A DNA stretch of 63,814 nucleotides, the filler included, from Octopus bimaculoides (lineage: Eukaryota), in the NCBI RefSeq assembly GCF_001194135.2. It is 4 parts of 4 records of this genome, joined end to end, with 100 filler letters (N's around TTAATTAATTAA, not from the genome) between each part and the next. Parts side by side here need not be neighbours in the genome. Positions count along the whole stretch, not along the records: positions 14,156 to 34,519 come from NC_068981.1; 3 more parts are not named here. The stretch is one strand, 5' to 3'. The position numbers and the translations under genes were made by a program. Numbering within the stretch: the stretch's first letter is position 1; every line of letters starts with the position of its first letter. Positions 15,355 through 33,955 of this stretch are shown piece by piece. Under the pieces are notes generated by a model. The model searched no databases, had not been told where the DNA came from, and was given only the letters and a program-made list of their open reading frames with translations.

Positions 15355-15554
15355 CCAGCAAATTAGCGACGAATGCAGCTTTTGTACTAATCATAAATGT
15401 CCCAAACATATTTGACCCGATCTATACGTTTGTTATTTACAACACTGCTTTCATGCATCCACTACAATATTAAATATTATAGATTATAAAATTTCGTTTT
15501 TGGATTTGGTTTGCAAGATTTTTTTTGTAATTTCGTGTGTTGAAGCATATTCTA

Positions 15555-15753
15555 TTGTGTCTGGGGAGAGTCATTTTCTTATTGTGCCTTGAAATTTAAC
15601 ACACACACCGTTAAAATTTCCACTTATTTTTAATTTTTATTTTCCTAAAATTTTCGTTGCGTCTTGCAACCTTATCAATCGTCTTGACTGTCAAGACTAT
15701 TGAGTGTGTTAAATGTCAAGGCACAATAAGAAAATGACTCTCCCCAGACACAA
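15555..15753. repeat. 50-bp inverted repeat with 1 mismatch
   Basis: 15555-15604 vs 15704-15753. Confidence 0.9.
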
Positions 15754-16654: not shown

Positions 16655-17156
16655 AATCAGAAGCCTCCATTGTCGACATGCTGGAAGATGCAGTTGTCTG
16701 TTTCGATAGAAACAGCATGATATTATCCTTGTTATCAATGTTTACTTTAAGAAAAGGAAAACATTATGATACCTTGAATTTTTTTTACTTAAATCAAAAG
16801 AATTTAATAAAAAAAAGCAAAAATGAAAAAAATTAATGTTATGCAATCTCAGTTTTTTTGATTAAATAGGAAGAAAACTAACTGCTCACCATTAATGAAA
16901 TTGTACTGCTTTTTCTTCTGTCTTCACACTTCCTAACAAAGTCACAAATTTCACTGTTGAAGCATTCGATTTATAGGAAAAGGAAAATCAATCATGTATT
17001 TATGTTAAAAACAAATCCAGTTTGCTGCACTTGGGATGGAAAACATGTCAGTAACATTGTTAATGTCAATACTGTTCCCATGAAAACAGTTCCCATGTTT
17101 CCCATGGTAACAGACAATTGTGGCTTCCAGTATGTTGGCAATGGAGGCTTCTGATT
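16655..17156. mobile_element. MITE-like element, about 500 bp, about 50-bp imperfect TIRs
   Basis: Outer 18 bp are perfect (AATCAGAAGCCTCCATTG / CAATGGAGGCTTCTGATT); AT-rich interior; no clear TSD. Confidence 0.7.
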
Positions 17157-17202
17157 ATCTAACATCACATAAATCTAAAGGCTTGTAACTTTTTCTTGTT
17201 AG

Positions 17203-17349
17203 TTTCTAGAGAAAATGAACAAGATTTTTGTCATCAGCATGCAAAACTACATCAGTGCAAAAAATCTGAAAAACATTCTGAGGATGGGAAGAAATTTAAT
17301 AAGACCCTCTACTACATATCCATATGTGTATTTGAATGCAGTCAGTGGG
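17203..17349 (+). CDS. Candidate exon of the same unidentified + strand gene (two frames open; ATG at 17215 gives MNKIFVISMQNYISAKNLKNILRMGRNLIRPSTTYPYVYLNAVSG)
   Basis: Acceptor ttttcttgttag, weak donor gtatag, 147 nt; phase link to the 19916 exon is unresolved. Confidence 0.35.
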
Positions 17350-17739
17350 GTATAGTTTTTTTAGCTATATTGTTTGTTTTAAGACCTTTGTGGTATGCAT
17401 GCTGATGATAGTTACAAAATTAGGTTGTCATGTGCCTTTTGTTTTCTTTTTTTTTGAGAGAGAGAGAGAGAGAGATGACACATTCCATATATTTCATAAA
17501 CATAACTAGCAATTTTCTTACAAATTTTTTGAGGGGCATTTTCAATGTACCCTTCTATGCTGAATCTAAATTTGAAATCATATTTTTCCATATCAGGCTT
17601 AGTTTTCTAGCAACACTAAATTCATTTTTCCCATTTCCTTTAGTGTAATTACTGATAAAAAGGAAAAAAGAAACTAGTGTATTATGTTAATTATTACAAC
17701 TATAATTAGCAATTTTAGGATTCTTTTATTATTTTTCAG

Positions 17740-18125
17740 ACATTTTACTGTGGCCATGCTGGACCACCACCTTAAAGGGTTTTTAGTAGAAGAAATTGAC
17801 TCCAGGATTTATTCTTTGTAAGCTTAGTACTTATTCTATCAATTCTTTAGCCAAACTGCTAAGTTACAGGGATGTAAACACACTGACATGTGTCCCCATC
17901 ATCAAGTGATGATGGGGACACAGACACACACACATAAATATATACACACACATATATATATATATGCATATATACAAGCTTCTTTCAGTTTCTGTCTACC
18001 AAATCTACTGACAAGACTTTGGTCAGCTCAAGGCTATAGTAAAAGACACTTGCCCAAGGTGCCATGCTGTGGGACTGAACCCAGAACCATGTGGCTGGGA
18101 AGCAAGCTTCTTATCACACAGCCAG
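17740..18125 (-). mobile_element. SINE family 1 near-full copy, CpG-decayed
   Basis: Same family with CpG to TpG/CpA changes. Confidence 0.85.
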
Positions 18126-18563
18126 TTGTATAAATTTTTATGCAAAATTAGTACAGCTACTTCCTTTATAAGTTGAAAGTTCTGCTAATGCTTGTATAAT
18201 AAATTTGACAAGAGCAGCAAATTGTGTTGCTTAAGCTAGAGTCTGCAAATAGATCTGGAACATGAGATGACAAAATATGCTAACTGACAAAAATATTATT
18301 GAAAATGAAAATATACATTAAAACAATTATAATCATGTAGATGACAATGACAAAAGAGAGTAGAATGAAAATCAGAGGAACAGTTATTTTAAATAAAAGG
18401 TTATTAAAGTTAGTATTGTTGTGCTTTGGTCATTTAGATACAGCCTTATTAAAGTCATTCTATATAGTTAAAGGTCTTCCAACTGTGATCATTGGTCTTT
18501 TTGTTATATCAAGTCCTTCATTTGTTTTTTTGGCCTGTTTTTCTATGCTAGCATGGTTTAGAT

Positions 18564-18807
18564 CAGGGGTTTTCAAACTTTTTGACTTGCGGACCCCCTT
18601 ATAAATGCTTATGAAATTTATACATAAATATTTGCTTAAAATAACATATATTTTTATATTTATTTATTTAACAGTATTTAATAAATAGGTTTATTGTCAA
18701 TTAAAAGATTTCGATTAAAAAACATATATAAAATCAAATTTCCCATAAAAAGTATTTGCTGTCCACGGACCCACTGTGGTCCGCAGACCACAGTTTGAAA
18801 ACCCCAG
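18564..18807. mobile_element. hAT-type MITE
   Basis: TIRs CAGGGGTTTTCAAACT / AGTTTGAAAACCCCAG and an exact 8-bp TSD GTTTAGAT on both sides. Confidence 0.9.
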
Positions 18808-19915
18808 GTTTAGATGAATATATTACTGAGGCATTGTTTTACAACTAAATACCCTTCCTATCATTAACTTTGCCTGTTTTTCAAGTTAGGGATCTCTTAT
18901 TTCACGTCTAAAACCCTTTAGCATTCAGATTACTCTGTCAAATGTAATGCTTGTATATTCACATTGTTTAGAATTAGTCATGCAGTATCTTTCAGCTTTG
19001 AGATTTTGATGTGATTGTTTACTTTTAGTATGACATTCTAGGGTAGGTGTGAGAGACCGGATTTGGCCAGTTTGAACATAAAACAGGCAGAACATTTGGG
19101 TCAGATATAGTTGGTTTAAATGCACGAAGCTAGTGGAAGATATGATGACAACAACATCACTGCTTGTAGTTCATGATTTTTAGAGAAGTGTAAATGTAAA
19201 CAAACACTCACACATACCTCCACCCACCCACACATATATATATACCTCCTCCTTACACATATGTAACCCCAACACAGATATAAATATAGTAGACTTCCTT
19301 CAGTTTTCCCCCCTCTCTGTTAAGGAGCACAAGCATTTACACACACATGTTCACACACGATGGAAACTTCCACCAACCAAATCCAATCACAAAGCTTCAG
19401 TTGGCCTGAGGCTATAGCAGAAGACACTTGCCTAAGGTGCCACACAGTGAGTCTGAGCCCAAAACCATGTGGCTGGGAAGCAAACTTCCTAACCACACAG
19501 CAATGCCTGCACCAACATGTAAATGCACCCATGTGGTGCCACATAAAAGCGTCTATGCAGTGCCATGTAAAAGCATCCAGCACACTCTGTAAAATGGTTG
19601 GCATTAGGAAGGGCATGAAGCCATAGAAATCAGACTGGAGTTCAGTGCAGTCCCTCCCCCACTTGTCAACTCGTCACACCATCAAACTCATGCTAGCATG
19701 GACTATGGATGTTACATGATGATGATGATGAAGCTTCTATCAGTTTTTGTTTAACAAATACACTCACAAGGCTTTGGTCAGCCCAGGGTTATAGTAGAAG
19801 ACACTTGCACAAGGTGCTACACAGTGGGACTAAACCTAAAACTACAAGGTTGGGAAGCTTCATTGCAACACAACCACACCTGAAGCTATATATTATTATT
19901 GTTCTATGTTTCCAG

Positions 19916-20075
19916 TTTTAAAGACAAAATACAACATTACTTGAGGAAAGTTGAGGAGCTATTTCATGCATACCAAATGGCAACATTAAGGCTTCCATGT
20001 GTTAAGGTTGGTACATATGGTAAAGTATCAAATGAAAGGCATCCAATACCAATCCTAGGGTTACAGGCACCCTGG
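19916..20075 (+). CDS. Candidate coding exon of an unidentified gene (FKDKIQHYLRKVEELFHAYQMATLRLPCVKVGTYGKVSNERHPIPILGLQAPW)
   Basis: Acceptor ctatgtttccag, donor gtaagc, only one open frame, non-repetitive sequence; family not recognised. Confidence 0.5.
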
Positions 20076-22211
20076 GTAAGCTAAATTTTAGTGTCATTCT
20101 GAGTATTTAAAAAAAATTTTCACAGCCTGTAAATGTTGGAAAAAACGGAAAGTGGTTATTACAGTTTATCAAATATATGAATAATAAAGTTTATTATTTT
20201 TAACCTTCCCCTTTATTTCAAGTTCCTACATCAGGTCATTTCATTTTATTCCACTTCAGTTTACTGAGCAGTCATGACAATCGGTTGTTACATCCTGGAT
20301 ATTCCATTGGTTCATGGTTAAGGAGGCAGAGAGGATGTCTATATCTACTTATGGTTATATAAGCACCTAAAGCAACTAGCAAAAACACAGAACATGCTTC
20401 CAAACTACACACACTCACAAGAGATCGTTGGTTATACATTAAGTACCAGTAAATGACAGAACTGTGGAATGATTGACAAAATCACCATCATCATTTAACA
20501 TTTGTTTCCCATGCTGACATTGGTTGGATGGTTTGACCAGAACCTGCAAGCTGGAGAGCTGCACCAGGTTCCATTCTGATTTGGCATGGTTTCTATGGCT
20601 GGATGCTGTTCTTAATGCCAACCCCTTTACAGTGTGTGCTGGGTGCTTTTAATATGACACTGTATGAGCACTTTTAGATGGCTCTGACACAAATCCTTTT
20701 TACATGACACTAGCACTGGACTCTTGCAGGCCAATCATCTTCACCAGGGGCAGCGGCTGCAAAATTTAACTTCAACCCTCTACAGTCTTAGTTCAAGCTT
20801 CACTAGGTTGACTTTGTTTTCTATCCTTATGGCGTAGATAAAACAGATGTTATTTAGAGTAAAATCATTTCAGTTTTATATAATCTTTTATGGATTTTAG
20901 CTCTGTGCCAAGCAAAAACAAATGAATTTATGAAATACCTTGTAAATATTGTAACTTTTATCTTTTACTTGTCTGCAGCCATACTGGAGGCACTGCCTTG
21001 AAGAAATTTTGTCAAATGATTGACCCCAGCACTTATTTTTTTTGTTTTTGTTAGGCTTGGTACTTATTCCATCAGTCCCTTTTTGTTGAACCAGTAATTT
21101 ATGGGGATGTAATTACACCAACACTGATTGCCAAGTGATGGTGGGGGACAAACACAAAGATGCACACACACGTGCACATGCACATGAACACGCACACACA
21201 CACACACACATGTGCAAGCGCATACACACACTCCTCTACACACATACATACATATATATATACTGTACGCTCACATGGTCACACCAGTTTTATCCTTCTT
21301 TAACCTACTACACTTTGGACTTACTACTGCCTGAACTTTCTGCACCTTTCCTCATCTACATACCAGCACTCCACTCGGATTACCACTGGATATACTTATG
21401 GATTTCACTGGACTCTTCCGTTGATGAAAAATCGCTCCAATACACCATGACATTTGAACCTTATTGAACTTTTTTGCCTCATACTCCTTGCTGTTGAATA
21501 GCATAGGTTTGAAACGTAAAAGACTCTCACTTTCCCGAGTGTCAAACTAATACACCTGCTTGTTGTTCATACACCTGTCTTCGTCTTTTGTTTTTCTGTA
21601 AATTTCAACTATATATATATATATATATAAGCAGGGTTTTGTGTCCTTATATGTACCTTTCCNNNNNNNNNNNNNNNNNNNNNNNNNNNNNNNNNNNNNN
21701 NNNNNNNNNNNNNNNNNNNNNNNNNNNNNNNNNNNNNNNNNNNNNNNNNNNNNNNNNNNNNNNNNNNNNNNNNNNNNNNNNNNNNNNNNNNNNNNNNNNN
21801 NNNNNNNNNNNNNNNNNNNNNNNNNNNNNNNNNNNNNNNNNNNNNNNNNNNNNNNNNNNNNNNNNNNNNNNNNNNNNNNNNNNNNNNNNNNNNNNNNNNN
21901 NNNNNNNNNNNNNNNNNNNNNNNNNNNNNNNNNNNNNNNNNNNNNNNNNNNNNNNNNNNNNNNNNNNNNNNNNNNNNNNNNNNNNNNNNNNNNNNNNNNN
22001 NNNNNNNNNNNNNNNNNNNNNNNNNNNNNNNNNNNNNNNNNNNNNNNNNNNNNNNNNNNNNNNNNNNNNNNNNNNNNNNNNNNNNNNNNNNNNNNNNNNN
22101 NNNNNNNNNNNNNNNNNNNNNNNNNNNNNNNNNNNNNNNNNNNNNNNNNNNNNNNNNNNNNNNNNNNNNNNNNNNNNNNNNNNNNNNNNNNNNNNNNNNN
22201 NNNNNNNNNNN

Positions 22212-22244
<33 letters not shown>

Positions 22245-22514
22245 CAGGGTTTTGTGTCCTTATATGTACCTTTCCTTCTTTGGATACAAAACCCTGCTTG
22301 CAAAGACCTGTTGAGGCAAGTGAAATCGAAATCGGAATCGAAATTGAACCAAAATCGATGACTGGCACCCATGCCAACCTTCCTACATTGGACACTAAAC
22401 TCAGTTTGCGAAGACCTATTGGGGTAAGTGAGATCGAAACTGGACCAAATTCGATGATTGGCACCCGTGCTAGTGGAGTGCTAACAGCACCATCCAAATG
22501 GAATCACTGCCAGA

Positions 22515-22893
22515 GCAGTGGTCTCGCTTCCGTGCCGGTGGCATGTAAAAAGCACCATTTGAACACGATCGTTTCCAGCTTTGCCTTACTGGCACTTGTG
22601 CCGGTGGCATGTAAACAAAACATTGGACTGATTCCTGTGCAGGTGGCATGTAAAAAACACCATTTGAGCGTGGCCGTTGCCGGTACCGCTGGACTGGCCC
22701 TCATGCTGGTGGAACGTAAAAAGCACCCATTACACTCTCGGAGTGGTTGGCGTTAGGAAGGGCATCCAGCTGTAGAAACTCTGCCAGATCAGATTAGAGT
22801 CTGGTGTAGCCATCTGGTTCGCCAGTCCCCAGTCAAATTGTCCAACCCATACTAGCATGGAAAGCGGACGTTAAATGATGATGATGATGATGA
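22515..22893 (+). mobile_element. SINE-like family 3 with internal TGCCGGTGGCATGTAAAAAGCACC repeats and a (GAT)n tail
   Basis: GGTTGGCGTTAGGAAGGGCATCCAGCTGTAGAAAC core; further copies near 19.6k, 20.5k, 32.3k, 33.5k, 53.8k, 55.4k and 56.5k. Confidence 0.8.
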
Positions 22894-24966
22894 TATATCA
22901 AGGACAACCTTAGCACTTCAGCCAGTACACACAATGCTAAAATGAAAAAAAACCATATAATTGAAATAAAGTATATTTAGCATGTATGTACCCTCCTTCC
23001 AGCAGTCTCTCATAAAGTTCTAGCATTCTGACGCAGACCACACCATTTTCTTCTCATCTTTCTTACTATTTACTATTCTATAGGCATTATTTGATATTTG
23101 TTTATCTAACTATAATCTTTTCATATATGCCACATGTCCCTTGTACAGTCTTGTCACATGTCCCCTGTACAGTCTTCTCTCTTGCACATTGTTCATGTAT
23201 GCTGTCATTACAGGTTCATGATGGGTTGGTGTAAGGGGTTAGTTTCATACTAGGTAATTTTGAAATTTGCATACAAATACAAGCATTTGCACTTCACTTG
23301 AGAGAAATCCTTTGCTGCCAACAGAGGTGACAGTTCTTTGAACTTTTTCCCACCCTGTTTTTACTCTGGCTACTATGCTTTAACAATACTTACATCCACC
23401 ACTGATTAGGTCACCTAGATAACTGAAACTGTCAACAACAAAATAACTTATGCTATCTTGCTCTGGATCTCGGAAGTCTGAGTTCAAATCTAGCCAAAGT
23501 CACCTTTGCTTTTCAGTCTTTTGGGGTTGATAAAATATAATACCATACCAGGTGGTGGACAGACAGAATTGTTAGAGCATCAAATGAGATGTCTTGTAGT
23601 GTTTATTTCAGCTTATTAAGTTATGAGTTCTTGAATGATAGATTTAATATGTCATTTGGTTTAATACCACAGCTGGTCTTTGGGTACCTTTAACAAATAT
23701 TAATTCTGTTGGAAGCATTCAAGTCAGCTCTCCAGTTTGGGAATAACTTTGGCCATCAAAAATAAAAAATCATGGATACTGTTTGTCCCTCCTTGACTAA
23801 ACAGTAATGATAAAATAAAATTTCAAAATAATTAAAAAAAGAAAATTCTTCCAGCACCCTTTCTGACCATTTTGAAGGCTATTTATGATTTTAAACAAAG
23901 GAGTTCATTCAATTATCATTGTTTGTAAATGAAAAATAAAGTAAAAAAGACATATGTTGATATCTAAAATTATTTACTCAACTACTAAAATAATGAGTAG
24001 ATTAACGTTTGTGAAGTTAAGGGGTTAAATTGTTGATCACATGCACATAAATTCAAACTTTAAGTGTTACAGTCTCTGTGCCATGACCCTGCACAAGAAA
24101 CATAACTCTGTTAGTCTTACTGTTGGTAGGGTCCACTTTCACCTGGACACTTGAGATGTTAGTAGTGGGACCAGCATTTTAACATAACATAACAAAAAAT
24201 ACCCAATTCTAAAAAGAAAAACAAAAAGATATTCGCCTGGGCAAACACGGGTTGAAAAATACATTCATATAGTTTGCAGTTGAGTGAAAGGATTTATAAA
24301 AATACAATGCTCTCTTTCTCTGTCAAACGTCCATATATGCAATTATACTGACAGTTGCTGACATACTTGTATTTTTTATTTCCTAGAATATGTTTTACAT
24401 TCAAGTCTTTTTTAAAAATTTTATTATCAAGGTTTTATCATGCTACAATGAAACTAAAAACTCAAGTATAGGCTTATTTTGATCATACACACATATACAC
24501 ACAGATAAACAGGCCTTATTATATTTTAAAGGATGGACAAACTGAATGTTGTGATGAGTTCATGCCTTTCTCAATTGAAGTGATAGCATAAGTCTAATGG
24601 AAACAACCTCAAATAATTACTGGTATTGTGTAGCAAACTAGGTTTGCTGGAAGCTTACCTTCTGCCCTATGCAGTAGCTACAAACAGAAAAAAACACATT
24701 TAAACTATATTTTGTAAGCTGTTCTTCATCTTTCTTGTAGTTTGATTCATTTAATTTGTGCTTAGAAATAAGGAGAGTCTCAATACATCTTTTTAAATTA
24801 TTACATATATATATATTGGTTTAACAATGTATTGCTGTTGCCATTGTCACCATCAGCAGTATCATCAAAATAAGGAATCATCAGGATATATATGTAACAA
24901 TCCCTGGAGCTTCATATTGTTAATATTATCATCATTAATATTATAAAGATGGAAATTTTCTTTCTG

Positions 24967-24980
24967 TCAAGCTTCACATT
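24967..24980 (-). CDS. ITGB: Integrin beta putative terminal coding exon (E-C-E-A-stop)
   Basis: Strong acceptor ttctttctctttgacag. Phase-1 join restores the conserved terminal EC of the beta-tail, followed by TGA at 24969-24967. Confidence 0.75.
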
Positions 24981-25027
24981 CTGTCAAAGAGAAAGAAATA
25001 TTTTTAGTAATAACTGACTAATAATGT

Positions 25028-25103
<76 letters not shown>

Positions 25104-25110
25104 ACGCATA

Positions 25111-25144
<34 letters not shown>

Positions 25145-26768
25145 AAGTTCTAACAAAAATTGTTACCTTTCCTCCGAATGACATAGGTTTTCATTTTATT
25201 ATTTGGACGTTGCTCAAGGGCAAACCTTACTCTACAGGAATCATAATCATCAATAAATAAACACAGATGTCTTGTCTTTTTTGTGTATATATCATCTACA
25301 ATATAAAAGCCATATTAATTCTGTTAAATAAATTATTAACAATATTATTTGTCTACAATAATAACAAAAAATAAATGACTTACAATCAAAATATAATAAA
25401 GACTTCTATTCTTCTATTCAAAAAATAGTCTCACATATAATCCTCGTCTTTATCTTTTACTTGTTTCAGTCATTGGACTGCAACCATGCTGAGGCATCAC
25501 CTTAAAGTGTTTTGGTTGAATGAACCAATCCCAGTACTTAAGCCTGGCACTCATTCTATCAGTGTTCTTCGCTGAACCACTGGGTTATGAGGATGCAAAC
25601 AAACCAATATCAATTGTCAAGTGGTGGTTGAGGGACTAAGATGCATGTGCACACACACACACATTTATGAGGCGGTACTGTAAAGTTCCTGGCTTTGGGT
25701 AAAAGTTAATTGTGATTTTATTCAACATATTCCCCTCTGAGATTCACACACTTATTGCAGTAGTCCTTCAGTTTTTCTTATCCCTGTAAAAGAGCTCAGA
25801 TGGTTGGGCCTCCAACCAGGTCTTTTGTGATACTCTTAAGGTCAGGAACTTTTCAGCACCTTCTCATATATATATATGATTGGCTTCTTTCACTTTCTGT
25901 CTACTAAGCCCATTCACAAGGCTTTGGTTGGCCCATGGCTATAGTAGAAGACATTTGCCCAAAGTGAAGCACTGTAGGACTGAACCTGGAACCATGTGGT
26001 TGGGAAGCATTCATATTTATATGCCCTACAACTGTAAGCTTATTCAGAACTTCCTGCTTCATTTCAATGATAGATTTTCTGTGTTGTTCAGCAAATATGT
26101 GGTCTGTTTCAACATCATTTTCCTGGCTGTTTTTTCTAGGGTCATTATATTTTCCTTTTTGTTGAGGCTCTTGAGTGGTTTCGGCAGATAGTCGCCTTTC
26201 AGTCAATGCTTGTGGTCCAACATTCCTCTCCTCTGCTTCGTCATTTCTTTCCTGACTTACATTTAGGTCATTCTCTACCACTTTTTTAATAGAGGTCAAT
26301 TCTGCATCTGTGAGTCTGATATTTCTGAAGATATCTCTTCTAACATTTGCTAACCTGTTTTCATCCAGGTTTAGTCTGCTAGCTGGATTCCGGCTCCTCC
26401 AAATTCTGTAGGAGTTTGCGGTGTGTTTCTTTTGGGTTGGCCTACTTAATGCAAAGTAATAAGCATATATTACTTATTTACATTCTTCCCGGTTCCATTT
26501 AGTTCTTTTACATTTTTGATTTTGTGGTTGTTGTGGTGGTGAACTTTGGGGGCTTAATTTGGGACAAATCCTGTTTAAGTGACCTTCCAGGTTTGTATTC
26601 AGGGGAGATATTTTGCCATCTGAAAATTTTTCGCCGTCAGGCTGACAGCCTCCTGACAGGCACGCTTCCAGAATAACGATTGGACAAGCGATTCAGTGTA
26701 CTGTTTGAAATTTTCTTTTCTTTTTAAGTAAAGTTAAATTATTATTAAATTTTCATTTTTTAAAAATA

Positions 26769-26802
<34 letters not shown>

Positions 26803-27181
26803 GTTCAGTAGTTTTATTTTTATAACGTGCTTTCACTTCACTACCGAGCGCAGCTCTGTGCGCCTTGGGTATGTGCTGTGGTTTGCTGTGGTGCTCTTAT
26901 GTTTACTGTATTGAAAGTGTTTTGCGTAGAATGTGTGCAGTACCCAGTAGTGCAATTTTCTGTATGTTATATATATTTGTAAGTCCTGGTGTTTTTGTTA
27001 TGTATTTGTCTGAATATTTTTTTATTATACCTAAGGCACCTACTATGATAGGAATTGTTTCTGTTTTTAGATTCCACATTCGAGTTACCTCTATTTCCAG
27101 GTCTTTGTATTTTGAAAGTTTTTCCATTTCTTTTAGAGAAACGTTGTCATCTGCTGGTATTGATACATCATTTTGAAAGCA

Positions 27182-27235
<54 letters not shown>

Positions 27236-29091
27236 TCACTGCCTGGAATTGAACATACATAATTCCTCATCTCTTAAATATAGAACCGTATTATTCAAAG
27301 CAATATGAATAATAAAGAAACATTATATTTGATAGAGAGTAATTTGAATGTTAAAGGGATAAGGTGGTGTTTAAAGCATAAATTGAAATGAAATATTAAT
27401 GGAAACTTATAATATAGATCAATGAAAATATGTATCATAGATTCAGGGATGGTCTCAGGCAGTTTTGTATCAGAAGGGTTAATACCAATATACTATTTTC
27501 ATAAACACTGCAATTATGAGAAATAATGCAAAAGCATATTTGTAGCAATACTAAACATGTTTTGATGATGAGCATTCAGTTGTTTGATCAACAGAACTAC
27601 CTACTTGTTAAATTAACATGTAAGTGGCTGAGTAGTCCACAGGCATGTGTACTCTTAAAGTAATTCACAGATTGAATCTGTGTGATGCAATATATGACAA
27701 GGACGGACCTCTATATTACAGGTACATTCTATCTGACAGGCTTCCAGATAGTCTCTGTCTACCGAATTTCACTCAGAAAGCATAGATTACTCTGAGGATA
27801 TGGTAAAAAAACACTTGTCCAAGATGCGACTCTGTAAGGTTGAACCTGAGGTCACATGATTGGGAAGTGAACTTCTTAACAATTCAGCTATGACTGTTTC
27901 TACTGAAAATATATCTTCTTTTGTAAGATAATCTATATTTTCCGTTGCTATATACCTTCATCTGTTTCCTCAAATTTCCCCGAGATTACATGATGCATAT
28001 TACAATCACTGTCATTTGTGACAATAATTCAATGTATCTAAGCATTAATTTATTCAAACATGTTTTCATAGATCTGTTTTTAAATTTCTCACTAGTTCAT
28101 AGGCGCAGGAGTGGCTGTGTGGTAAGTAGCCATAGGCGCAGGAGTGGCTGTGTGGTAAGTAGCTTGCTTACCAACCACATGGTCCCAAGTTCAGTCCCAC
28201 TGCATGGCACCTTGGGCAAGTGTCTTCTACTATAGCCTCGGGTCGACCAAAGCCTTGTGAGTGGATTTGGTAGACGGAAACTGGAAGAAGCCTGTCGTAT
28301 ATGTATATATATATATGTATGTGTGTCTTTGTGTGTTTTGTTTGTCCCCCCCCCCAGCATTGCTTGACAACCGATGGTGGTGTGTTTACGTCCCTGTAAC
28401 TTAGCGGTTCGGCAAAAGAGACCGATAGAATAAGTACTGGGCTTACAAAGAATAAGCTCTGGGGTTGATTTGCTTGACTATAAAGGCAGTGCTCCAGCAT
28501 GGCCGCAGTCAAATGACTGAAACAAGTAAAAAAGTAAAAAAAAAGAGAAAAAGAGTATTTAAATAAGCAACTTACCCAAACTGTCAACTAAGTGGATAGG
28601 GGCACACTTTATACATTGTTCAAATGTTAGAGTACCAGTGCCAAAGACCTTGCATAAAACACATTGTTTCATCCTCTCACACTTGTTGACACATGTCTGA
28701 AGTAGAAGACGTGAATAATTTTAAATAATTTAGAATTTATATTGTCAGTAGAAAAAAATAAACAAACAAACAAGAAACACATGCATCAAAGTGAAGAAGT
28801 TATATGTAAATAGGTTGCAATGAAACAGAAAGGATCAGCTCATGAGAAAACAGAAAATAGCACTATTAAAACCAATATAATTTGTTAGATAATGACCAAT
28901 CAGAAGTGAGAAAGTATACCTGGTTGCATTATGATGTGGAAGACAATGCATAATACAGGTAATCTTTTATTCTGTGTTAACTCAACTTTGAGAATAAAAT
29001 TGGTGTAATGTAGATTTCTTTTTCCATTTTGCATGTTTGTTTATGTAACATAAAACTTATGTAACATCTTTTATCTTTACTTGTTTCAGTC

Positions 29092-29151
<60 letters not shown>

Positions 29152-29433
29152 TTGATTTTCTTTATATATTTGATTCTCTATATTTAATACTCAATATTTC
29201 ATATATTCAATAAGACATTCAACAATTCATTTCATTTTTCATTTTACCATTTATATTATATTATATATTCCATATTCTATACCCCACATTAATTTTATGA
29301 GAATATAAATAAAACATAAAAAACAGAGTTGGAACTCTTTTAAATAACATATTCCTCTATACACGATCATACAAAACCCTTTTTTTGTATATATTTTTCA
29401 TTTTTATTTTTATTTTGTATATTTATTTTTATT

Positions 29434-29467
<34 letters not shown>

Positions 29468-30851
29468 CACACACACACACACACATGCATATGCTCTAAC
29501 ATCACATCTATGCTCTGATCCTTGTTACTTGTGAGTATACCCCGGCACTTCACCATCTCTCTCCTGCTCTCTCTTGCACTCTCCAAAAGTGTCTCTCCAA
29601 AAAAGAGGTGGTACTTCATTTTAAAATACTTACACATCTCTCAAATTAAGAAAAAAAATGTCATTAAGAAAACACTGGTCATGATATATTCAAAATCACC
29701 TTATATTTGAATATATATTATCAATATGAAAATAAGTTTCTTTTATGAAGTTACCAGAATGCAACTGTAGTTATAAATAATAGTTTCAAATTTTGGGACA
29801 GGGCAAGCAGTTTTTGAGGGGAAGGGGAAGTTGATTACATTGACCCTAGTACTTGACTGGTATTTATTTTATCAACCTCGAAAGGATGAAAGGCAAAGTC
29901 GACCTCAGTAGAATTTGAGCTCAGAATGTAAAGACAGATGAAATGCTGCTGAACATTTTTTCCTGCACTCTACCTTATTGTAGTCATAAATAATAGCTCA
30001 CAAAATACTGAGTAATAAAATACTTTACTCAGAAAAAAAAGAGAGCTATATATGGAAGATAAACTACACATCAGTATTGTTGATGGATGGGATTACCATA
30101 CACCAAAGTAGCTCTCTGACTTTTAGCCATCTAAATCAGAAGTTTTCATTTTACAAGCAAAACAGGAAGTTTGTTCACATTTAGATCATGAGCTAGAAGC
30201 ATTGAGAAATGCAAAACAGTTGTCTCTTTTCTGAAACAAAACAGTTGTCTCTTTTCTGAAACAAAACAGTTGTCTCTTTTCTGAAACAAAACAGTTGTCT
30301 CTTTTCTGAAACAAAACAGTTGTCTCTTTTCTGAAACAAAACAGTTGTCTCTTTTCTGAAACAAAACAGTTGTCTCTTTTCTGAAACAAAACAGTTGTCT
30401 CTTTTCTTAAATACAAGCTAGTATTTATATTTATTTGTATTTGAGCAACTTCATAGAAGTAACTTGTTTTCATGTTTCTCAATGCTTCTAAATTACAAAA
30501 CAATGTAAACAAATATAGTAATATGTTTCAACAATCACTTTGTGTGAAAGTGACTGTCTATAGCAAGCAGCAGAACAAATATTTGACAATAGTTAATTAT
30601 ACTTACTGGACAATCTTCACATGTTGGTCCTCTATAAGTACCTATACATGTGCATACATTGTTTGTACAGGTTCCTTTCCCATTACATAATAGCTGCAGA
30701 AAGAATCAAAATACAGCTTCATAAATATTAGTTCAGTTATACATGGTCATACTTTGTATGGTTATGACAGGGTGTGTATTTTAGGCTATGTTTATTAGTC
30801 GTTTAGTTTGATTTAGTCATTACAACTAAGACCATGTTGGACCACCACCTT

Positions 30852-30897
<46 letters not shown>

Positions 30898-33591
30898 NNN
30901 NNNNNNNNNNNNNNNNNNNNNNNNNNNNNNNNNNNNNNNNNNNNNNNNNNNNNNNNNNNNNNNNNNNNNNNNNNNNNNNNNNNNNNNNNNNNNNNNNNNN
31001 NNNNNNNNNNNNNNNNNNNNNNNNNNNNNNNNNNNNNNNNNNNNNNNNNNNNNNNNNNNNNNNNNNNNNNNNNNNNNNNNNNNNNNNNNNNNNNNNNNNN
31101 NNNNNNNNNNNNNNNNNNNNNNNNNNNNNNNNNNNNNNNNNNNNNNNNNNNNNNNNNNNNNNNNNNNNNNNNNNNNNNNNNNNNNNNNNNNNNNNNNNNN
31201 NNNNNNNNNNNNNNNNNNNNNNNNNNNNNNNNNNNNNNNNNNNNNNNNNNNNNNNNNNNNNNNNNNNNNNNNNNNNNNNNNNNNNNNNNNNNNNNNNNNN
31301 NNNNNNNNNNNNNNNNNNNNNNNNNNNNNNNNNNNNNNNNNNNNNNNNNNNNNNNNNNNNNNNNNNNNNNNNNNNNNNNNNNNNNNNNNNNNNNNNNNNN
31401 NNNNNNNNNNNNNNNNNNNNNNNNNNNNNNNNNNNNNNNNNNNNNNNNNNNNNNNNNNNNNNNNNNNNNNNNNNNNNNNNNNNNNNNNNNNNNNNNNNNN
31501 NNNNNNNNNNNNNNNNNNNNNNNNNNNNNNNNNNNNNNNNNNNNNNNNNNNNNNNNNNNNNNNNNNNNNNNNNNNNNNNNNNNNNNNNNNNNNNNNNNNN
31601 NNNNNNNNNNNNNNNNNNNNNNNNNNNNNNNNNNNNNNNNNNNNNNNNNNNNNNNNNNNNNNNNNNNNNNNNNNNNNNNNNNNNNNNNNNNNNNNNNNNN
31701 NNNNNNNNNNNNNNNNNNNNNNNNNNNNNNNNNNNNNNNNNNNNNNNNNNNNNNNNNNNNNNNNNNNNNNNNNNNNNNNNNNNNNNNNNNNNNNNNNNNN
31801 NNNATATATATATATATATATATATAATGAATGATAAGGGAACAGGAGTCATGTAACAATCTGAGGTGGGGAAAGACATCCAGAAATATGCGGATTTACA
31901 TGAGCATATTATTATAATATGGATCTTCGTCCACCTGCATGCTACTGTTGACACTGTAATATCCTTGTCGCCACTATTATGTAGTGGTGGTATTCTGTAT
32001 CTTATTATCTTTGACTCATCTATCGTGCTATCGCTGATAGATCTGCAAGACAATGACTCAATGACTTTGAAATGTCTACTTTGATGGTAACTCAAACTCG
32101 TATATATCATGTAACTGACACTGACTCCAGCTGAGAACTTGTACAATGACTCTACTACTACTGACCACCTACAATAACTGACTGTCTGACTTTGTCACAT
32201 GGGAAGTAGTATACCATTTTCACTACAGTACATATGTATTCACATATATATATCATTTTTTTTTTGTCTTGCAAGGTACTTGGTGACCCTGTCAGTGCAG
32301 GTGCTACTTAAAAAGCATCCATTCCACACTGTAAAGTGGTTGGTGTTTAGAAGGACATCCAGCTGTAAAAACCTTGCCAAAACTGACCTCTCCTGTGTTA
32401 GTACCTCGTAAAAAGCACTAAGTCCACTCTGCTGAGTGGTTGGTGATAGGAAGGGCATCCAGCTGTAAAAGTCCTGCCAAAACAGTCACAGAGGTCTGGT
32501 GCAGGCTTCTGCCTGGCTGGCTCCTGTCAAACCGTCCAACCCATGCAAGCATGGAAAAGTAGATTTTAAAATGGTGGTGATATGTATTACTGCGAATTAT
32601 TTGTTCAATCTCAGAATATTATTTGTATTTTAGAGTTCATTGAGATAAGAAGAAAGGATGGAGAACTGTAAAGAAGTTATTAATAATAAAATAAGGAAAA
32701 GCAATTACTAACTCCATTTGATGCCATACACTTATCTGTTGCTTTGGTGAGAGAACAACTTGAACCTTCAAAGCCTTTTTTGCATTGACATTCCCCACAT
32801 ACACATACTCCTTGTTTTATACCTAGGAAAAAAAATTAACATTTATTTATTTTAGGCAAATTATACATTGGAAATATATATATATATATATAATTAGTAT
32901 CTGTATTTTTAAGATAGACAGTAGACACACACGCAGAAGAAAGAAAATGAATTAAAACTTTGGTTAACTGTGTACATGATAGTGTTTTGGGCTAAAAGTA
33001 ATAAAAACATTACCTATTGCATTCATCAGTGTCGGTATTTCAAGGCATAAATATACGAGTGACCACGAATATGTAAGCAAGCTGCGTCTTCACTTAGCTT
33101 ATATCCGTCGAGACTCGCAGAGATATGCTGCGAAGTAGAATTCATATCCTTGTCTTATAGCCACATGCAGTGCATTAAAAATCAAGCCTGCAGTTAATAC
33201 AGTTTTGATCAAGGAGTAAATATTTTTTTCAAATATTAATTATAATAATAATAAAGGGTAAAAATCATTAATGATTTTTACCAGGTGGTCAGCACGGAAA
33301 TAAAACCTCATAGGTAAATTTTATAAATATTTTATAATTATATACATAATTATAACAAGGGCTTAGCTTGTGCCTCACCACGTACTGAAAAATAGATGTC
33401 AAATGACACTATTACCCCCATAAATTCTCATTTAATGTCCATCTTCCATGCTGGTAGCCATTGGACGGTTTGACAGGAGCCAGCCAGGTTGAAGACTACA
33501 ACAGTTTACTGTGTCTGTTTTGGCATGGTTTTTACAGTTGGATGCCCTTCTTAACACCAACCACCCCGTAGAGTACATTCATATATGTGTG

Positions 33592-33632
<41 letters not shown>

Positions 33633-33955
33633 GTGTATGCAGCTGTGTTATGTCCTTTGCACCAGAATTTACATCTTTCATTTCTTACAAAAATGATAAA
33701 CTCTCCAATGAGATAGAGTAATAGGATGGATGTAATCAACTGAAGCATTTAAAGGCAATGCTCCGACATGGCTGTCTTTCATTGACTGAAACCAGAAAAA
33801 GAATGAAAGAAAACCTCAGCTATAATATCTAATAATGATGATTATCAAAATGATAGATTTCCAACAAATGCTTTACCGCCACAAAGTTTTCCATCAAAGT
33901 ATTCACAGCTGTAATCATTACATTCACAAAACTGACCAGTATAGCGGTAGGAACC
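24967..33955 (-). CDS. ITGB: Integrin beta subunit(-like) gene, 3' part: 6 exons, 540 nt spliced, 179 aa plus stop (I-EGF3, I-EGF4, beta-tail; no TM or cytoplasmic tail seen)
   Basis: Manual splicing of exons 33955-33877, 32822-32713, 30693-30607, 28696-28576, 25295-25167 and 24980-24967. All introns are GT-AG and all phases are compatible (0/1,1/0,0/0,0/1,1/1,1/stop). Peptide: GSYRYTGQFCECNDYSCEYFDGKLCGGIKQGVCVCGECQCKKGFEGSSCSLTKATDKCMASNGLLCNGKGTCTNNVCTCIGTYRGPTCEDCPTCVNKCERMKQCVLCKVFGTGTLTFEQCIKCAPIHLVDSLDDIYTKKTRHLCLFIDDYDSCRVRFALEQRPNNKMKTYVIRRKECEA*. Cys spacing matches integrin beta I-EGF and tail domains. The paralog cannot be assigned. Confidence 0.93.
25167..25295 (-). CDS. ITGB: Integrin beta exon (DDIYTKKTRHLCLFIDDYDSCRVRFALEQRPNNKMKTYVIRRK)
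   Basis: Acceptor cttttatattgtag, donor gtaaca, 129 nt; spacing matches the beta-tail C..DDC..F....NN....V...EC pattern. Confidence 0.88.
25668..25866. mobile_element. Tc1/mariner-type MITE inserted in the TA microsatellite of a SINE
   Basis: TA flanks; imperfect TIRs TGAGGCGGTACTGTAAAGTTCCTG / CAGGAACTTTTCAGCACCTTCTCA; partial relative at about 6190-6323. Confidence 0.8.
26015..26760 (-). mobile_element. Probable 5' region of a Dong/R4-like element (degenerate N-terminal ORF)
   Basis: Follows the (TAA)n tract; degenerate ORF ..IKKVVENDLNVSQERNDEAEE..; assignment from recall. Confidence 0.5.
26800..27175 (-). mobile_element. Dong/R4-clade non-LTR retrotransposon 3' end in a (TAA)n tract
   Basis: EKLSKYKDLEIEVTRMWNLKTETIPIIVGALG..QKIALLGTAHILRK is the C-terminus of a restriction-like endonuclease; TAA repeats on both sides. 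Confidence 0.88.
28098..28545 (+). mobile_element. SINE family 1 full-length young copy with a duplicated 33-bp head
   Basis: tRNA-like head, CORE-like block, internal (TA/TG)n, 3' GACTGAAACAAGTAAAA tail. Confidence 0.92.
28576..28696 (-). CDS. ITGB: Integrin beta exon (TCVNKCERMKQCVLCKVFGTGTLTFEQCIKCAPIHLVDSL)
   Basis: Acceptor tcttctacttcag, donor gtaagt, 121 nt, beta-tail C-V-x-C-x-x-F-x-x-G motif. Confidence 0.92.
30212..30407. repeat. 25-bp minisatellite, 7.8 identical copies (CAAAACAGTTGTCTCTTTTCTGAAA)
   Basis: Units start at 30212, 30237 ... 30387; lies within an integrin intron. Confidence 0.97.
30607..30693 (-). CDS. ITGB: Integrin beta exon (LLCNGKGTCTNNVCTCIGTYRGPTCEDCP)
   Basis: Acceptor ttctttctgcag, donor gtaagt, 87 nt, I-EGF4. 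Confidence 0.93.
32713..32822 (-). CDS. ITGB: Integrin beta exon (GIKQGVCVCGECQCKKGFEGSSCSLTKATDKCMASNG)
   Basis: Acceptor ttttttttcctag, donor gttagt, 110 nt, motif G-x-C-x-C-G-x-C-x-C-x-x-G-F-x-G-x-x-C. Confidence 0.93.
33877..33955 (-). CDS. ITGB: Integrin beta exon (GSYRYTGQFCECNDYSCEYFDGKLCG)
   Basis: Acceptor atatttttag, donor gtaaag, 79 nt, I-EGF motif Y-x-G-x-x-C-E-C. Confidence 0.93.

What the first reader, a model, noticed from the sequence alone, without database searches (positions are those of the whole stretch)
24967..33955. Integrin beta-like gene that stops just before the transmembrane helix: candidate secreted integrin beta
Seen: six exons splice cleanly through a complete beta-tail, and the last exon reads E-C-E-A-TGA. 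Known: canonical beta subunits continue from this EC into a TM helix, then the HDRxE and NPxY motifs. I found no TM, HDRxE or NPxY in any frame after the stop, or in other phase-compatible EC exons downstream; those candidates at about 23.0k and 17.3k also stop within a few codons. The upstream exons are intact, which argues against an old pseudogene. Inference: a soluble or decoy beta chain, or a secreted isoform made by an alternative terminal exon.
Basis: partly seen in the sequence, partly recalled or inferred. Interest (0 to 1): 0.85.

Follow-up and report, generated by a model that had tools for sequence, protein, structure and literature searches.

The report
Octopus secreted head-less integrin-beta-like gene
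This is the 3' end of an already annotated octopus gene for a secreted integrin-beta relative that has no ligand-binding head, membrane anchor or cytoplasmic tail, so the early stop is real and conserved, but the protein is not a truncated integrin beta subunit.

Summary
Its 179-aa product matches, residue for residue, the C-terminus of two public Octopus bimaculoides models, RefSeq XP_014791256.1 ("integrin beta-like protein 1") and UniRef A0A0L8I313. The 976-aa orthologues in O. vulgaris and O. sinensis come from gap-free assemblies. They keep all six exons and all splice sites, and they stop at the same codon, which is TAA there and TGA here. None of the three species has a transmembrane or cytoplasmic exon in the roughly 10 kb downstream. 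The gap at 30898-31803 lies inside an intron and hides no residue. The gap at 21663-22211 carries the same 53 bases on both sides and sits in a stretch that O. sinensis lacks.

The full protein consists of a signal peptide, PSI, a hybrid domain with the beta-I domain cut out, I-EGF1, five I-EGF2-3-4 units, a beta-tail and then the stop. The 14-base last exon sits where canonical octopod beta genes have their transmembrane exon, after the same phase-1 intron.

The protein is therefore a constitutively anchor-less, head-less integrin-beta paralogue. It is closest in kind to vertebrate ITGBL1. It is neither a decoy beta chain that carries a head nor an alternative isoform. Similar unanchored models exist in annelids, other molluscs, arthropods and fishes. 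Transcript evidence and function were not tested.

The parts
33877..33955 (-). Coding exon, 79 nt. It encodes GSYRYTGQFCECNDYSCEYFDGKLCG(G), the start of the last I-EGF3-like module. It is the first exon of the gene inside this piece; earlier exons lie beyond 34519.
   Evidence: Splice sites and frame. The same exon and borders occur in O. sinensis L003 10001-10079. An intron sits at the same ...CGG| position in Capitella and in the canonical Argonauta beta gene.
32713..32822 (-). Coding exon, 110 nt. It covers the rest of the I-EGF3-like module and the start of the I-EGF4-like module, and ends ...CMASNG.
   Evidence: O. sinensis L003 11623-11732 matches at 101/110 bases.
30898..31803 (.). Assembly gap (906 N) inside the intron between the second and third exons. 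(TA)n runs stand on both sides.
   Evidence: The flanks align to L003 16848 and 17978, inside one O. sinensis intron. (TA)n is seen at both edges. No residue is missing across the junction.
30607..30693 (-). Coding exon, 87 nt: LLCNGKGTCTNNVCTCIGTYRGPTCEDCP. It holds the I-EGF4-like module, which lacks the C1-C5 cysteine pair.
   Evidence: L003 18169-18255 matches at 82/87 bases. An intron follows ...CEDCP| in Capitella and Argonauta as well.
28576..28696 (-). Coding exon, 121 nt: first half of the beta-tail domain (TCVNKCERMKQCVLCKVFGTGTLTFEQCIKCAPIHLVDSL).
   Evidence: Pfam Integrin_B_tail. 120/121 bases are identical in O. sinensis.
25167..25295 (-). Coding exon, 129 nt: second half of the beta-tail domain. 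It ends ...KTYVIRRK at a phase-1 donor, AAAG|GTAACA.
   Evidence: 124/129 bases are identical in O. sinensis, and the donor is conserved.
24981..25166 (-). Last intron, 186 nt, phase 1. It is mostly a (GA)n(GT)n microsatellite, followed by a pyrimidine tract and CAG.
   Evidence: AC repeat at 25030-25101. It is shorter in O. sinensis and O. vulgaris, but both splice sites are unchanged.
24967..24980 (-). Terminal coding exon: (G)AA TGT GAA GCT TGA, reading E-C-E-A-stop. The Cys is the last beta-tail cysteine. The exon stands in the position of the transmembrane exon of canonical beta genes.
   Evidence: It is identical in O. sinensis and O. vulgaris except that the stop is TAA. Argonauta's canonical beta gene has the same phase-1 intron followed by (S)CPIPDYVLPL..., its transmembrane exon. 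Capitella's unanchored gene has the same intron followed by VCPFYEGEK-stop.
14156..24966 (-). Downstream region (3' UTR and beyond). It holds no transmembrane or cytoplasmic exon. It consists of repeats and microsatellites and is colinear with O. sinensis apart from insertions and deletions.
21663..22211 (.). Assembly gap (549 N) downstream of the gene. The same 53 bases stand on both sides (21610-21662 = 22223-22275), so the contig ends overlap and the gap is probably spurious.
   Evidence: The gap lies within window 22924-20591, which has no counterpart in O. sinensis (L003 23388 runs straight on to 23396).

Best explanation
The finding is the last six coding exons of an Octopus bimaculoides gene that public annotation already holds as XP_014791256.1, 'integrin beta-like protein 1'. 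In this species the N-terminal half is annotated separately as XP_014791255.1.

The orthologues in O. vulgaris and O. sinensis show the whole product. It is a 976-aa protein made of a signal peptide, a PSI domain, a hybrid domain from which the beta-I domain is cleanly absent, I-EGF1, five tandem units of I-EGF2-3-4-like modules (about 16 EGF modules in all) and one beta-tail domain. It stops two residues after the last beta-tail cysteine.

The 14-base terminal exon follows the same phase-1 intron that precedes the transmembrane exon in a canonical octopod beta gene. It is therefore most simply read as the remnant of that exon. It keeps the codon for the structurally needed cysteine and then terminates.

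Shown here: the gene model, its identity with existing annotation, conservation of the exons, splice sites and stop position in three Octopus species, the absence of any transmembrane or cytoplasmic exon nearby, and the absence of beta-I.

Inferred: the protein is secreted as a long rod-like extracellular glycoprotein. By analogy with vertebrate ITGBL1, it may act outside the cell on integrins or matrix partners. It would not pair with an alpha subunit as a receptor half.
For: - Model and domains.
- Identity with annotation: 179/179 aa match P0270 (XP_014791256.1) and P0271 (A0A0L8I313), including KECEA at the very end.
- Orthologues: O. vulgaris CAI9716324.1 and O. sinensis XP_029637747.1 are 976 aa, 92% identical over this part, and end in the same residues.
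- Conservation in DNA: all six exons and their AG/GT borders are kept in O. sinensis. The stop is at the same codon but TAA, not TGA, in both O. sinensis and O. vulgaris.
- Selection: dN/dS is 0.48. No cysteine is changed. The beta-tail exons differ at 6 of 250 bases, against about 9% in flanking non-coding DNA.
- No hidden exon: no transmembrane, HDRxE or NPxY coding in the window downstream, nor in 10 kb of gap-free sequence in the other two species.
- No head: Pfam finds no Integrin_beta (PF00362) domain in the orthologue. Its N-terminus aligns to beta-2 residues 9-89, then jumps to about 333-497. It aligns in one piece to engineered beta-I-deleted beta-2 fragments 2p26 and 5e6w.
- No anchor: the only hydrophobic stretch is the N-terminal signal peptide.
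- Shared intron: the phase-1 intron matches canonical Argonauta beta (transmembrane exon follows) and the unanchored Capitella gene (9-codon terminal exon follows).
- Separate canonical genes: octopods also have ordinary beta genes with a transmembrane segment and tail, for example O. sinensis XP_029652598.1.
Against: - No transcript, EST or protein evidence was examined. All models are computational predictions, and prediction pipelines could share a bias towards the nearest in-phase acceptor.
- The terminal exon is only 14 bases. By itself it is no more than chance would give.
- Only about 10 kb downstream was inspected, so a very distant alternative exon is not excluded.
- dN/dS of 0.48 shows only moderate constraint, and the two EGF exons diverge about as fast as the introns.
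- The functional analogy with ITGBL1 rests on architecture alone. ITGBL1's own mechanism is disputed in the literature (PMC7563769).
Confidence: 0.85

Rival explanations
1. An ordinary integrin beta gene whose transmembrane and cytoplasmic exons are merely out of sight, either in the gap at 21663-22211 or beyond the edge of the piece at 14156. On this reading the ECEA-stop exon is a chance match.
For: A 14-base exon of this kind is expected by chance about 4 times in the downstream 10.8 kb, and 6 were found. The piece ends 10.8 kb after the beta-tail and contains a gap. Octopus introns can be long: up to about 11 kb in this gene in O. sinensis.
Against: The full-length orthologues have no beta-I domain, so the gene is not an ordinary beta subunit whatever its end. 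Two gap-free assemblies show no such exon in 10 kb downstream. The gap has overlapping flanks and lies in DNA absent from O. sinensis. The exon, its acceptor and the stop position are conserved across species, with a stop-to-stop change. Canonical beta genes exist elsewhere in octopod genomes.
Confidence: 0.03
2. The ECEA-stop exon is one of two alternative terminal exons. A second, membrane-anchored isoform of the same gene uses a distant transmembrane exon.
For: The acceptor sits only 186 bases after the donor, so a skipped-exon isoform is mechanically possible. Nothing beyond 10 kb downstream was inspected. Vertebrate beta genes do use alternative 3' exons (general knowledge).
Against: No transmembrane or cytoplasmic coding lies within 10 kb in three species. 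The two RefSeq isoforms of O. sinensis encode the same 976-aa protein. The Capitella relative lies in a compact locus with no such exon in the 10 kb examined downstream, which also holds the next annotated genes.
Confidence: 0.05
3. A decaying partial duplicate (pseudogene) of an integrin beta gene that lost its head and its anchor and no longer makes a functional protein.
For: The beta-I domain, membrane helix and tail are all missing. Two cysteines of the I-EGF4-like module are missing. dN/dS of 0.48 is not strongly constrained, and the EGF exons diverge about as fast as the introns. O. bimaculoides annotation breaks the gene into two models.
Against: A 976-codon frame spread over roughly 100 kb of exons and introns is intact in two species. 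All splice sites in this part are kept and no cysteine is changed among 14 substitutions. The two missing cysteines are exactly the C1-C5 partners of one disulfide, and they are missing in every I-EGF4-like module of the protein and in Haliotis, which marks a family trait and not decay. The beta-tail exons are far better conserved than the flanking DNA.
Confidence: 0.05
4. A shared gene-prediction artefact. All public models end here only because prediction programs picked the nearest in-phase acceptor, and the true 3' end differs, for example by read-through of the 25167 donor to give ...RRKGNNFC-stop.
For: No transcript evidence was seen here. Read-through of the donor also meets a cysteine and a stop within 7 codons. 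The models carry inconsistent names such as 'tenascin-X' and 'integrin beta pat-3', which suggests they were never curated.
Against: The spacing YVIRRK-EC matches beta-3 YVVEEP-EC exactly only with the spliced exon. The pyrimidine tract, the CAG acceptor and the four codons are unchanged in species whose non-coding DNA differs by about 9%. The intron position and phase are the same as in canonical Argonauta and in Capitella. Even if this rival were right, the protein would still lack an anchor.
Confidence: 0.05

Closest known systems
ITGBL1 / TIED (vertebrate integrin beta-like protein 1)
   Same: It has a signal peptide, a run of integrin-type EGF modules well beyond the four of a beta subunit, and no beta-I head, membrane helix or cytoplasmic tail. 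It has been shown to be secreted, and one study reported that it binds integrins and lowers their activity (PMC7563769). RefSeq gives this very name to the O. bimaculoides model and to the Haliotis rubra relative.
   Different: ITGBL1 is described as ten EGF-like repeats and nothing else. The octopus protein also keeps PSI, a beta-I-less hybrid domain, I-EGF1 and a complete beta-tail, and it has about 16 EGF modules. Orthology with vertebrate ITGBL1 was not tested.
Zebrafish truncated beta-1 paralogues (beta1tr-1, -2, -3; Mould et al. 2006, PMC1538996)
   Same: [quoted passage not shown] They are an established precedent for anchor-less beta paralogues.
   Different: The zebrafish forms keep the beta-I (A) domain and stop four residues after EGF-4, so they lack the beta-tail. 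The octopus protein is the reverse: no beta-I, and a complete beta-tail.
Canonical octopod integrin beta subunits (Argonauta hians GAB1605708.1; O. sinensis XP_029652598.1)
   Same: PSI, hybrid, I-EGF and beta-tail domains are shared. Identity is about 38-41% over the window's part. Intron positions match after ...CGG, after ...CEDCP and before the last cysteine codon, the last in the same phase 1.
   Different: The canonical genes have beta-I, a membrane helix and an (H/Y)DRRE...NPxY tail. Their exon after the shared intron reads (S)CPIPDYVLPL... and continues into the helix, whereas here it reads ECEA-stop.
Unanchored, head-less integrin-beta-like models in other animals
   Same: They have no beta-I domain by sequence comparison, carry EGF modules and a beta-tail, and end 0-6 residues after the last beta-tail cysteine. 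PSI and a hybrid domain were seen only where the sequences were read (Capitella, Haliotis, turbot). Examples are Capitella CAPTEDRAFT_224236, Haliotis rubra XP_046562643.1, Lottia LOTGIDRAFT_228160, Liolophura XP_064594425.1 and XP_064617978.1, a moth, a beetle, a spider and several teleosts. The Capitella gene shows the same terminal mini-exon design.
   Different: Most have a single set of EGF modules (199-537 aa), not five units. Capitella keeps the C1-C5 cysteines. Scallop, crab, shrimp and horseshoe-crab relatives end instead in a short hydrophobic tail. Whether all of these form one old family is unresolved, and none appears in the literature I could search.
Engineered beta-I-deleted beta-2 fragments (PDB 2p26, 2p28, 5e6w)
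   Same: The octopus N-terminus (PSI, hybrid, I-EGF1-2) aligns with them in one continuous stretch, residues 28-279 to 9-258. This shows that a hybrid domain without its beta-I insert is a foldable unit.
   Different: These are laboratory constructs, not natural proteins.

Membership tests
Integrin beta subunit (canonical) | Beta-I (A) domain with MIDAS, inserted in the hybrid domain (Pfam PF00362) | tested here: not met
   This part lies outside the window. It was tested on the 976-aa orthologue, and the sequence of the O. bimaculoides N-terminal model was read. Pfam gives no PF00362 hit. The alignment to beta-2 jumps from residue 89 to about 333, and it is continuous with beta-I-deleted constructs.
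Integrin beta subunit (canonical) | Cysteine-rich I-EGF stalk followed by a beta-tail domain | tested here: met
   Integrin_B_tail at E=2.1e-11, above the cut-off. The peptide is colinear with beta-3 residues 515-687 at E=6e-26.
Integrin beta subunit (canonical) | Single transmembrane helix after the beta-tail | tested here: not met
   The stop comes two residues after the last cysteine. No hydrophobic integrin-like exon lies downstream in three species. The only hydrophobic stretch in the full protein is the signal peptide.
Integrin beta subunit (canonical) | Cytoplasmic tail with HDRxE and NPxY motifs (Pfam PF08725) | tested here: not met
   Motif scans and tblastn with canonical and octopod tails found nothing.
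ITGBL1 / TIED | Signal peptide and no membrane anchor, hence secreted | tested here: met
   The sequence features are met in the orthologue. Actual secretion was not tested.
ITGBL1 / TIED | More integrin-type EGF repeats than the four of a beta subunit | tested here: met
   Five tandem units of about 129 aa, each holding three modules, plus I-EGF1.
ITGBL1 / TIED | Built of EGF repeats only, with no PSI, hybrid or beta-tail | tested here: not met
   The octopus protein has PSI, hybrid and beta-tail domains. ITGBL1 is described as ten EGF repeats and a signal peptide (PMC7563769).
ITGBL1 / TIED | Orthology with vertebrate ITGBL1 | not tested
The name comes from RefSeq's automatic naming.
Zebrafish-type truncated beta paralogues (beta1tr) | Retains beta-I; stops right after EGF-4, without a beta-tail | tested here: not met
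   Here beta-I is absent and the beta-tail is complete.
Head-less, unanchored beta-like group (Capitella, Haliotis, Lottia, chiton and others) | No beta-I, EGF modules plus a beta-tail, ending within a few residues of the last beta-tail cysteine (PSI and hybrid seen where sequences were read) | tested here: met
Head-less, unanchored beta-like group (Capitella, Haliotis, Lottia, chiton and others) | Common descent, separate from canonical beta genes | tested here: inconclusive
   The window peptide's best matches are unanchored models at 40-47% identity, but canonical ones reach 41%. The neighbour-joining tree has deep supports below 30%. Arthropod and fish unanchored forms group with their own canonical genes or only with each other.

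The most novel reading that the evidence does not exclude
Head-less, anchor-less integrin beta paralogues (no beta-I; EGF modules plus a beta-tail; PSI and hybrid where checked) may be an old and widespread class of secreted proteins in bilaterians. They would be distinct from ITGBL1 and so far undescribed in the literature. On this reading they act as free 'integrin legs' that regulate integrin conformation or matrix assembly, and octopods have lengthened theirs to about 16 EGF modules by tandem duplication of a three-module unit.
Probability: 0.3. Interest if true: 0.5.

Novelty: new member of a known kind. Interest (0 to 1): 0.3.

Why it matters
The main value is corrective. The striking "integrin that stops before its membrane helix" is a real, conserved gene end. 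However, it belongs to a head-less stalk protein that databases already hold under four unrelated names: integrin beta-like protein 1, integrin beta-2-like, tenascin-X and integrin beta pat-3.

Three smaller points follow.
- Such models are often discarded as incomplete. Nine of twelve oyster beta candidates were dropped for lacking a membrane domain (PMC7390872). The conserved stop here, and the matching design of the Capitella gene, suggest that at least some of them are genuine secreted proteins.
- The shared phase-1 intron shows a simple route from receptor subunit to secreted protein: the transmembrane exon is cut down to the one cysteine codon that the beta-tail needs.
- If these proteins modulate integrins as has been reported for ITGBL1, they would be natural tools for studying the leg-to-leg contacts that hold integrins bent.

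Tried and rejected
- The first protein search, with the 179-aa peptide, found nothing. This was a false negative of the word index, because identical proteins are in the collection. The lead came from a search with an artificial chimera of the window peptide and a consensus integrin tail. That search brought in Capitella P0103, which then served as the query for the exhaustive search.
- Chance was tested as an explanation for the 14-base exon. Such sites are as common as expected (6 found, 4.0 +/- 2.0 expected). Only its closeness to the donor is unusual, at about 0.2% on criteria chosen after seeing it. Sequence statistics alone could not decide the matter.
- A neighbour-joining tree of unanchored against canonical sequences was unresolved.
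- The locus of the canonical O. sinensis beta gene was not on record, so the Argonauta gene was used instead.
- Polyadenylation signals downstream of the stop (ATTAAA at +211, AATAAA at +541) say nothing in DNA this AT-rich.
- Pfam found nothing in the long open frames inside introns and downstream.
- Literature searches for invertebrate ITGBL1-like or cephalopod integrin beta studies gave no paper on this protein.
- A GPI anchor was considered and rejected for octopus, because the end ...KECEA has no hydrophobic tail. Some scallop, crab, shrimp and horseshoe-crab relatives do have one.

Full report
**What is in the window.** The piece 14156-34519 is AT-rich (about 33% G+C) and has two runs of N, at 21663-22211 and 30898-31803. 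Six segments on the minus strand have canonical AG/GT borders: 33955-33877, 32822-32713, 30693-30607, 28696-28576, 25295-25167 and 24980-24967. They join into one frame of 179 codons that ends E-C-E-A-TGA. Pfam recognises an integrin beta-tail domain over residues 97-178 (E=2.1e-11, 44.6 bits against a cut-off of 33.6) and EGF modules before it. Against solved structures the peptide is colinear with human beta-3 residues 515-687 (E=6e-26). That stretch covers the end of I-EGF3, I-EGF4 and the beta-tail up to its last cysteine.

- The splice from 32713 to 30693 is phase 0.
- The junction reads CMASNG|LLCNGKG. Human beta-3 has CMSSNGLLCSGRG at the same place with no residue between.
- The 976-aa orthologues from gap-free assemblies have RCMASNGLLCNGKG.
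- At DNA level, the right flank of the gap (window 31806-32165) aligns to O. sinensis L003 16495-16848, and the left flank (30883-30362) aligns to 17978-18500.

The 906 N thus stand for about 1.1 kb of a single intron. Both edges of the gap are (TA)n runs. No exon is hidden and the frame is continuous.

**Is the 14-base last exon more than chance?** Taken alone, it is not. The pattern AG|A(A/G)TG(T/C), an acceptor that would complete Glu-Cys in phase 1, occurs 6 times in the 10.8 kb downstream. Markov-1 simulations of the same sequence give 4.0 +/- 2.0. Only two things make the 24980 site stand out: it lies 186 bases after the donor, and it has a good pyrimidine tract. I chose both criteria after seeing it. 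No frame between 14156 and 25166 encodes a plausible membrane helix followed by HDRxE or NPxY, and tblastn with canonical tails finds nothing. From the window alone the question stayed open, because a transmembrane exon could lie in the second gap or beyond the edge of the piece.

**Outside evidence settles it.**
- A first word-indexed search with the peptide returned nothing. This later proved to be a false negative.
- A search with an artificial chimera of the peptide and a consensus integrin tail retrieved many integrin fragments. Among them, the best match to the window's own part was a 321-aa Capitella teleta protein. It has a signal peptide, PSI, EGF modules and a beta-tail, but no beta-I, membrane helix or tail, and it ends 8 residues after the last beta-tail cysteine.
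- Using that protein in the exhaustive search brought in P0122, which is 92% identical to all 179 residues and ends at the same residue.
- Its 90% cluster holds O. vulgaris CAI9716324.1 and O. sinensis XP_029637747.1/XP_036362697.1, both 976 aa. It also holds three O. bimaculoides entries: XP_014791256.1 ("integrin beta-like protein 1", 604 aa), UniRef A0A0L8I313 (298 aa) and XP_014791255.1 (379 aa, the N-terminal half).
- The 604-aa and 298-aa O. bimaculoides entries end with exactly the window's 179 residues.

**Conservation of the end.**
- In O. sinensis (L003) and O. vulgaris (L005), both free of N in the stretches fetched, all six exons are present with the same borders.
- The last intron keeps its donor AAAG|GTAACA and its acceptor TTTCTTTCTCTTTGACAG, although its microsatellite differs in length.
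- The last exon reads AATGTGAAGCT followed by TAA in both species and by TGA here. The stop sits at the same codon with a different stop triplet.
- Over the 179 codons there are 9 synonymous and 18 non-synonymous differences (dN/dS 0.48), and none touches a cysteine.
- The two beta-tail exons differ at 6 of 250 bases, while the surrounding non-coding DNA differs by about 9%.
- The 10 kb after the stop in each of the two gap-free species contains no membrane-helix or integrin-tail coding.
- The window's downstream DNA is colinear with O. sinensis, except that window 22924-20591 has no counterpart there (L003 23388 runs on to 23396). The second gap lies inside that extra stretch.
- That gap has the same 53 bases on both sides (21610-21662 = 22223-22275), so the two contig ends overlap and little or nothing is missing.

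**What the whole protein is.** The O. vulgaris and O. sinensis sequences start with a typical signal peptide and a PSI domain.
- The N-terminal 279 residues align to beta-2 residues 9-89 and then to about 333-497, skipping the beta-I domain.
- They align in one unbroken stretch to the engineered beta-I-deleted beta-2 fragments 2p26 and 5e6w.
- Pfam finds no Integrin_beta domain and no cytoplasmic domain.
- After I-EGF1 come five tandem units of about 129 residues. Each looks like I-EGF2, 3 and 4. The single beta-tail follows.
- The only hydrophobic 19-mer above a Kyte-Doolittle mean of 1.6 is the signal peptide. By contrast, two canonical octopod beta chains show a second peak of 3.1 at their membrane helix.
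- In the I-EGF4-like module of the window, the first and fifth cysteines are both absent (L for C, N for C, against beta-3). These two form one disulfide in integrin EGF modules, which is established knowledge of the I-EGF fold. The same pair is missing in every such module of the octopus protein and in Haliotis, but present in Capitella. A paired loss of this kind is a lineage trait, not decay.

**How the end arose.**
- In a canonical octopod beta gene (Argonauta hians GAB1605708.1, locus L004), the beta-tail exon ends ...ATC AAA GAG AAA T|GTAAGT. The next exon, 1.5 kb on, begins CG TGC CCT ATC..., reading Ser-Cys-Pro-Ile-Pro-Asp, and runs through the membrane helix to ...AKWTS.
- The window has AGG AAA G|GTAACA, then AA TGT GAA GCT TGA. 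The intron position and phase are the same.
- The unanchored Capitella gene has CGC G|GTAAGC, then TG TGT CCC TTT TAC GAA GGT GAG AAA TGA. The position and phase are again the same, with a nine-codon terminal exon. The 10 kb examined after its stop holds no transmembrane exon, and the next annotated genes (HEXIM and IFRD homologues) begin about 5 kb after the stop.
- Introns after ...CGG and after ...CEDCP are also shared by all three genes, and the one after ...SNG by the window and Capitella at least.

The simplest reading is that the terminal mini-exon descends from the transmembrane exon. It keeps the cysteine codon that closes the beta-tail and ends straight after it. This step is inference.

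**Most likely function.** What is shown is the architecture: a signal peptide, no anchor, no beta-I head, a long EGF rod, and PSI-hybrid and beta-tail domains at the two ends. Without a beta-I domain the protein cannot form the alpha/beta head or bind ligand through a MIDAS site. This follows from established integrin structure.

The closest described protein is vertebrate ITGBL1. It has a signal peptide and ten integrin-type EGF repeats, it is secreted into culture medium, and one study reported that it binds integrins and lowers their activity while another did not find this (PMC7563769). I therefore propose a secreted extracellular protein that acts on integrins or matrix partners through its leg-like modules. 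I put about 0.85 on "constitutively unanchored, head-less, probably secreted" and no more than about 0.3 on the integrin-modulating role.

**Comparison with what is known.**
- Anchor-less beta paralogues as separate genes are documented in zebrafish, with cDNA support. Those keep beta-I and lack the beta-tail (PMC1538996).
- In the oyster genome, nine of twelve beta candidates lacked a membrane domain and were set aside (PMC7390872).
- In the protein collection, 46 of the 166 fetched sequences with a beta-tail match lack a cytoplasmic-domain match. More than a dozen of those 46 have no beta-I and end 0-6 residues after the last beta-tail cysteine.
- Their names place them in Haliotis, Lottia, a chiton, Capitella, a moth, a beetle, a spider and teleosts. 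Scallop, crab, shrimp and horseshoe-crab relatives end in a short hydrophobic tail instead.
- A neighbour-joining tree over the shared 184 columns does not resolve whether these form one family.
- I found no paper that describes this architecture.

**Verdict.** The "integrin beta chain, decoy, or alternative isoform" part is not. The gene is already annotated, and it belongs to a known kind, the secreted integrin-beta-like stalk proteins, although it has extra end domains and more repeats than ITGBL1. Interest is modest. The main gap in the evidence is transcript and protein data, which these tools could not reach.

Noticed in passing
window 21610-21662 and 22223-22275 (flanks of the gap at 21663-22211): The same 53 bases, (TA)n followed by AAGCAGGGTTTTGTGTCCTTATATGTACCTTTCC, stand on both sides of the 549-N gap. 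The two contig ends overlap, so the gap is probably spurious.
   Followed up: partly
window 20591-22924: This 2.3-kb stretch, made of repeat copies and microsatellites plus the gap, has no counterpart in O. sinensis, where L003 23388 and 23396 are adjacent. It is a lineage-specific insertion or deletion downstream of the gene.
   Followed up: partly
window 25030-25140 (last intron): The 186-base last intron is almost entirely a (GA)n(GT)n microsatellite, with 36 AC/GT units. Its length differs in O. sinensis and O. vulgaris, but both splice sites stay intact.
   Followed up: yes
window 30212-30411 (intron between the third and fourth exons): A 25-base unit (CAAAACAGTTGTCTCTTTTCTGAAA) is repeated 8 times at 99% identity. 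O. sinensis seems to hold far fewer copies at the matching place, L003 18451-18500.
   Followed up: partly
outside the window: O. bimaculoides XP_014791255.1 and XP_014791256.1: RefSeq splits this gene into two models in O. bimaculoides (379 aa and 604 aa), whereas O. vulgaris and O. sinensis have a single 976-aa model. Names for the same protein differ widely: integrin beta-2-like, integrin beta-like protein 1, tenascin-X and integrin beta pat-3.
   Followed up: partly
window 32713-32740 and 30640-30670 (I-EGF4-like module); P0122 throughout; P0125: The first and fifth cysteines of every I-EGF4-like module are both missing in the octopus protein and in the Haliotis relative, but present in Capitella and in canonical beta chains. 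One disulfide has been lost as a pair.
   Followed up: partly
window 18026-18184, 19323-19673, 22473-22870, 25907-26000, 28100-28477, 32243-32618, 33435-33578: A short interspersed repeat occurs on both strands in introns and downstream; its translated copies read ...SQPHGSGFSPTAWHLGQVS.... Copies also occur at several places in the O. sinensis locus. No family name was obtained.
   Followed up: no
window 25907-26473 and 26906-27184 (minus strand, intron before the fifth exon): Two long open frames of 189 and 93 codons lie inside the intron. They have no Pfam match and may be relics of a mobile element.
   Followed up: partly
P0121 (Penaeus vannamei XP_069973095.1), P0135, P0139, P0158, P0163: Shrimp has a 971-aa protein with three tandem units of EGF modules plus a beta-tail. 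Shrimp, crab, scallop and horseshoe-crab head-less relatives end in a short hydrophobic tail, which could be a GPI-anchor signal.
   Followed up: no
L001 13551-13577 (Capitella last exon): Inside the nine-codon terminal exon, the sequence GAAG|GTGAGA looks like a usable splice donor, so an alternative end cannot be excluded for Capitella. No transmembrane exon was found in the 10 kb examined downstream, which includes the next annotated genes.
   Followed up: partly
tool behaviour: The word-indexed protein search missed proteins containing the query at 100% identity (P0270, P0271) and at 92% identity (P0122). A negative result from that tool is weak evidence for cysteine-rich repeat proteins.
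   Followed up: yes
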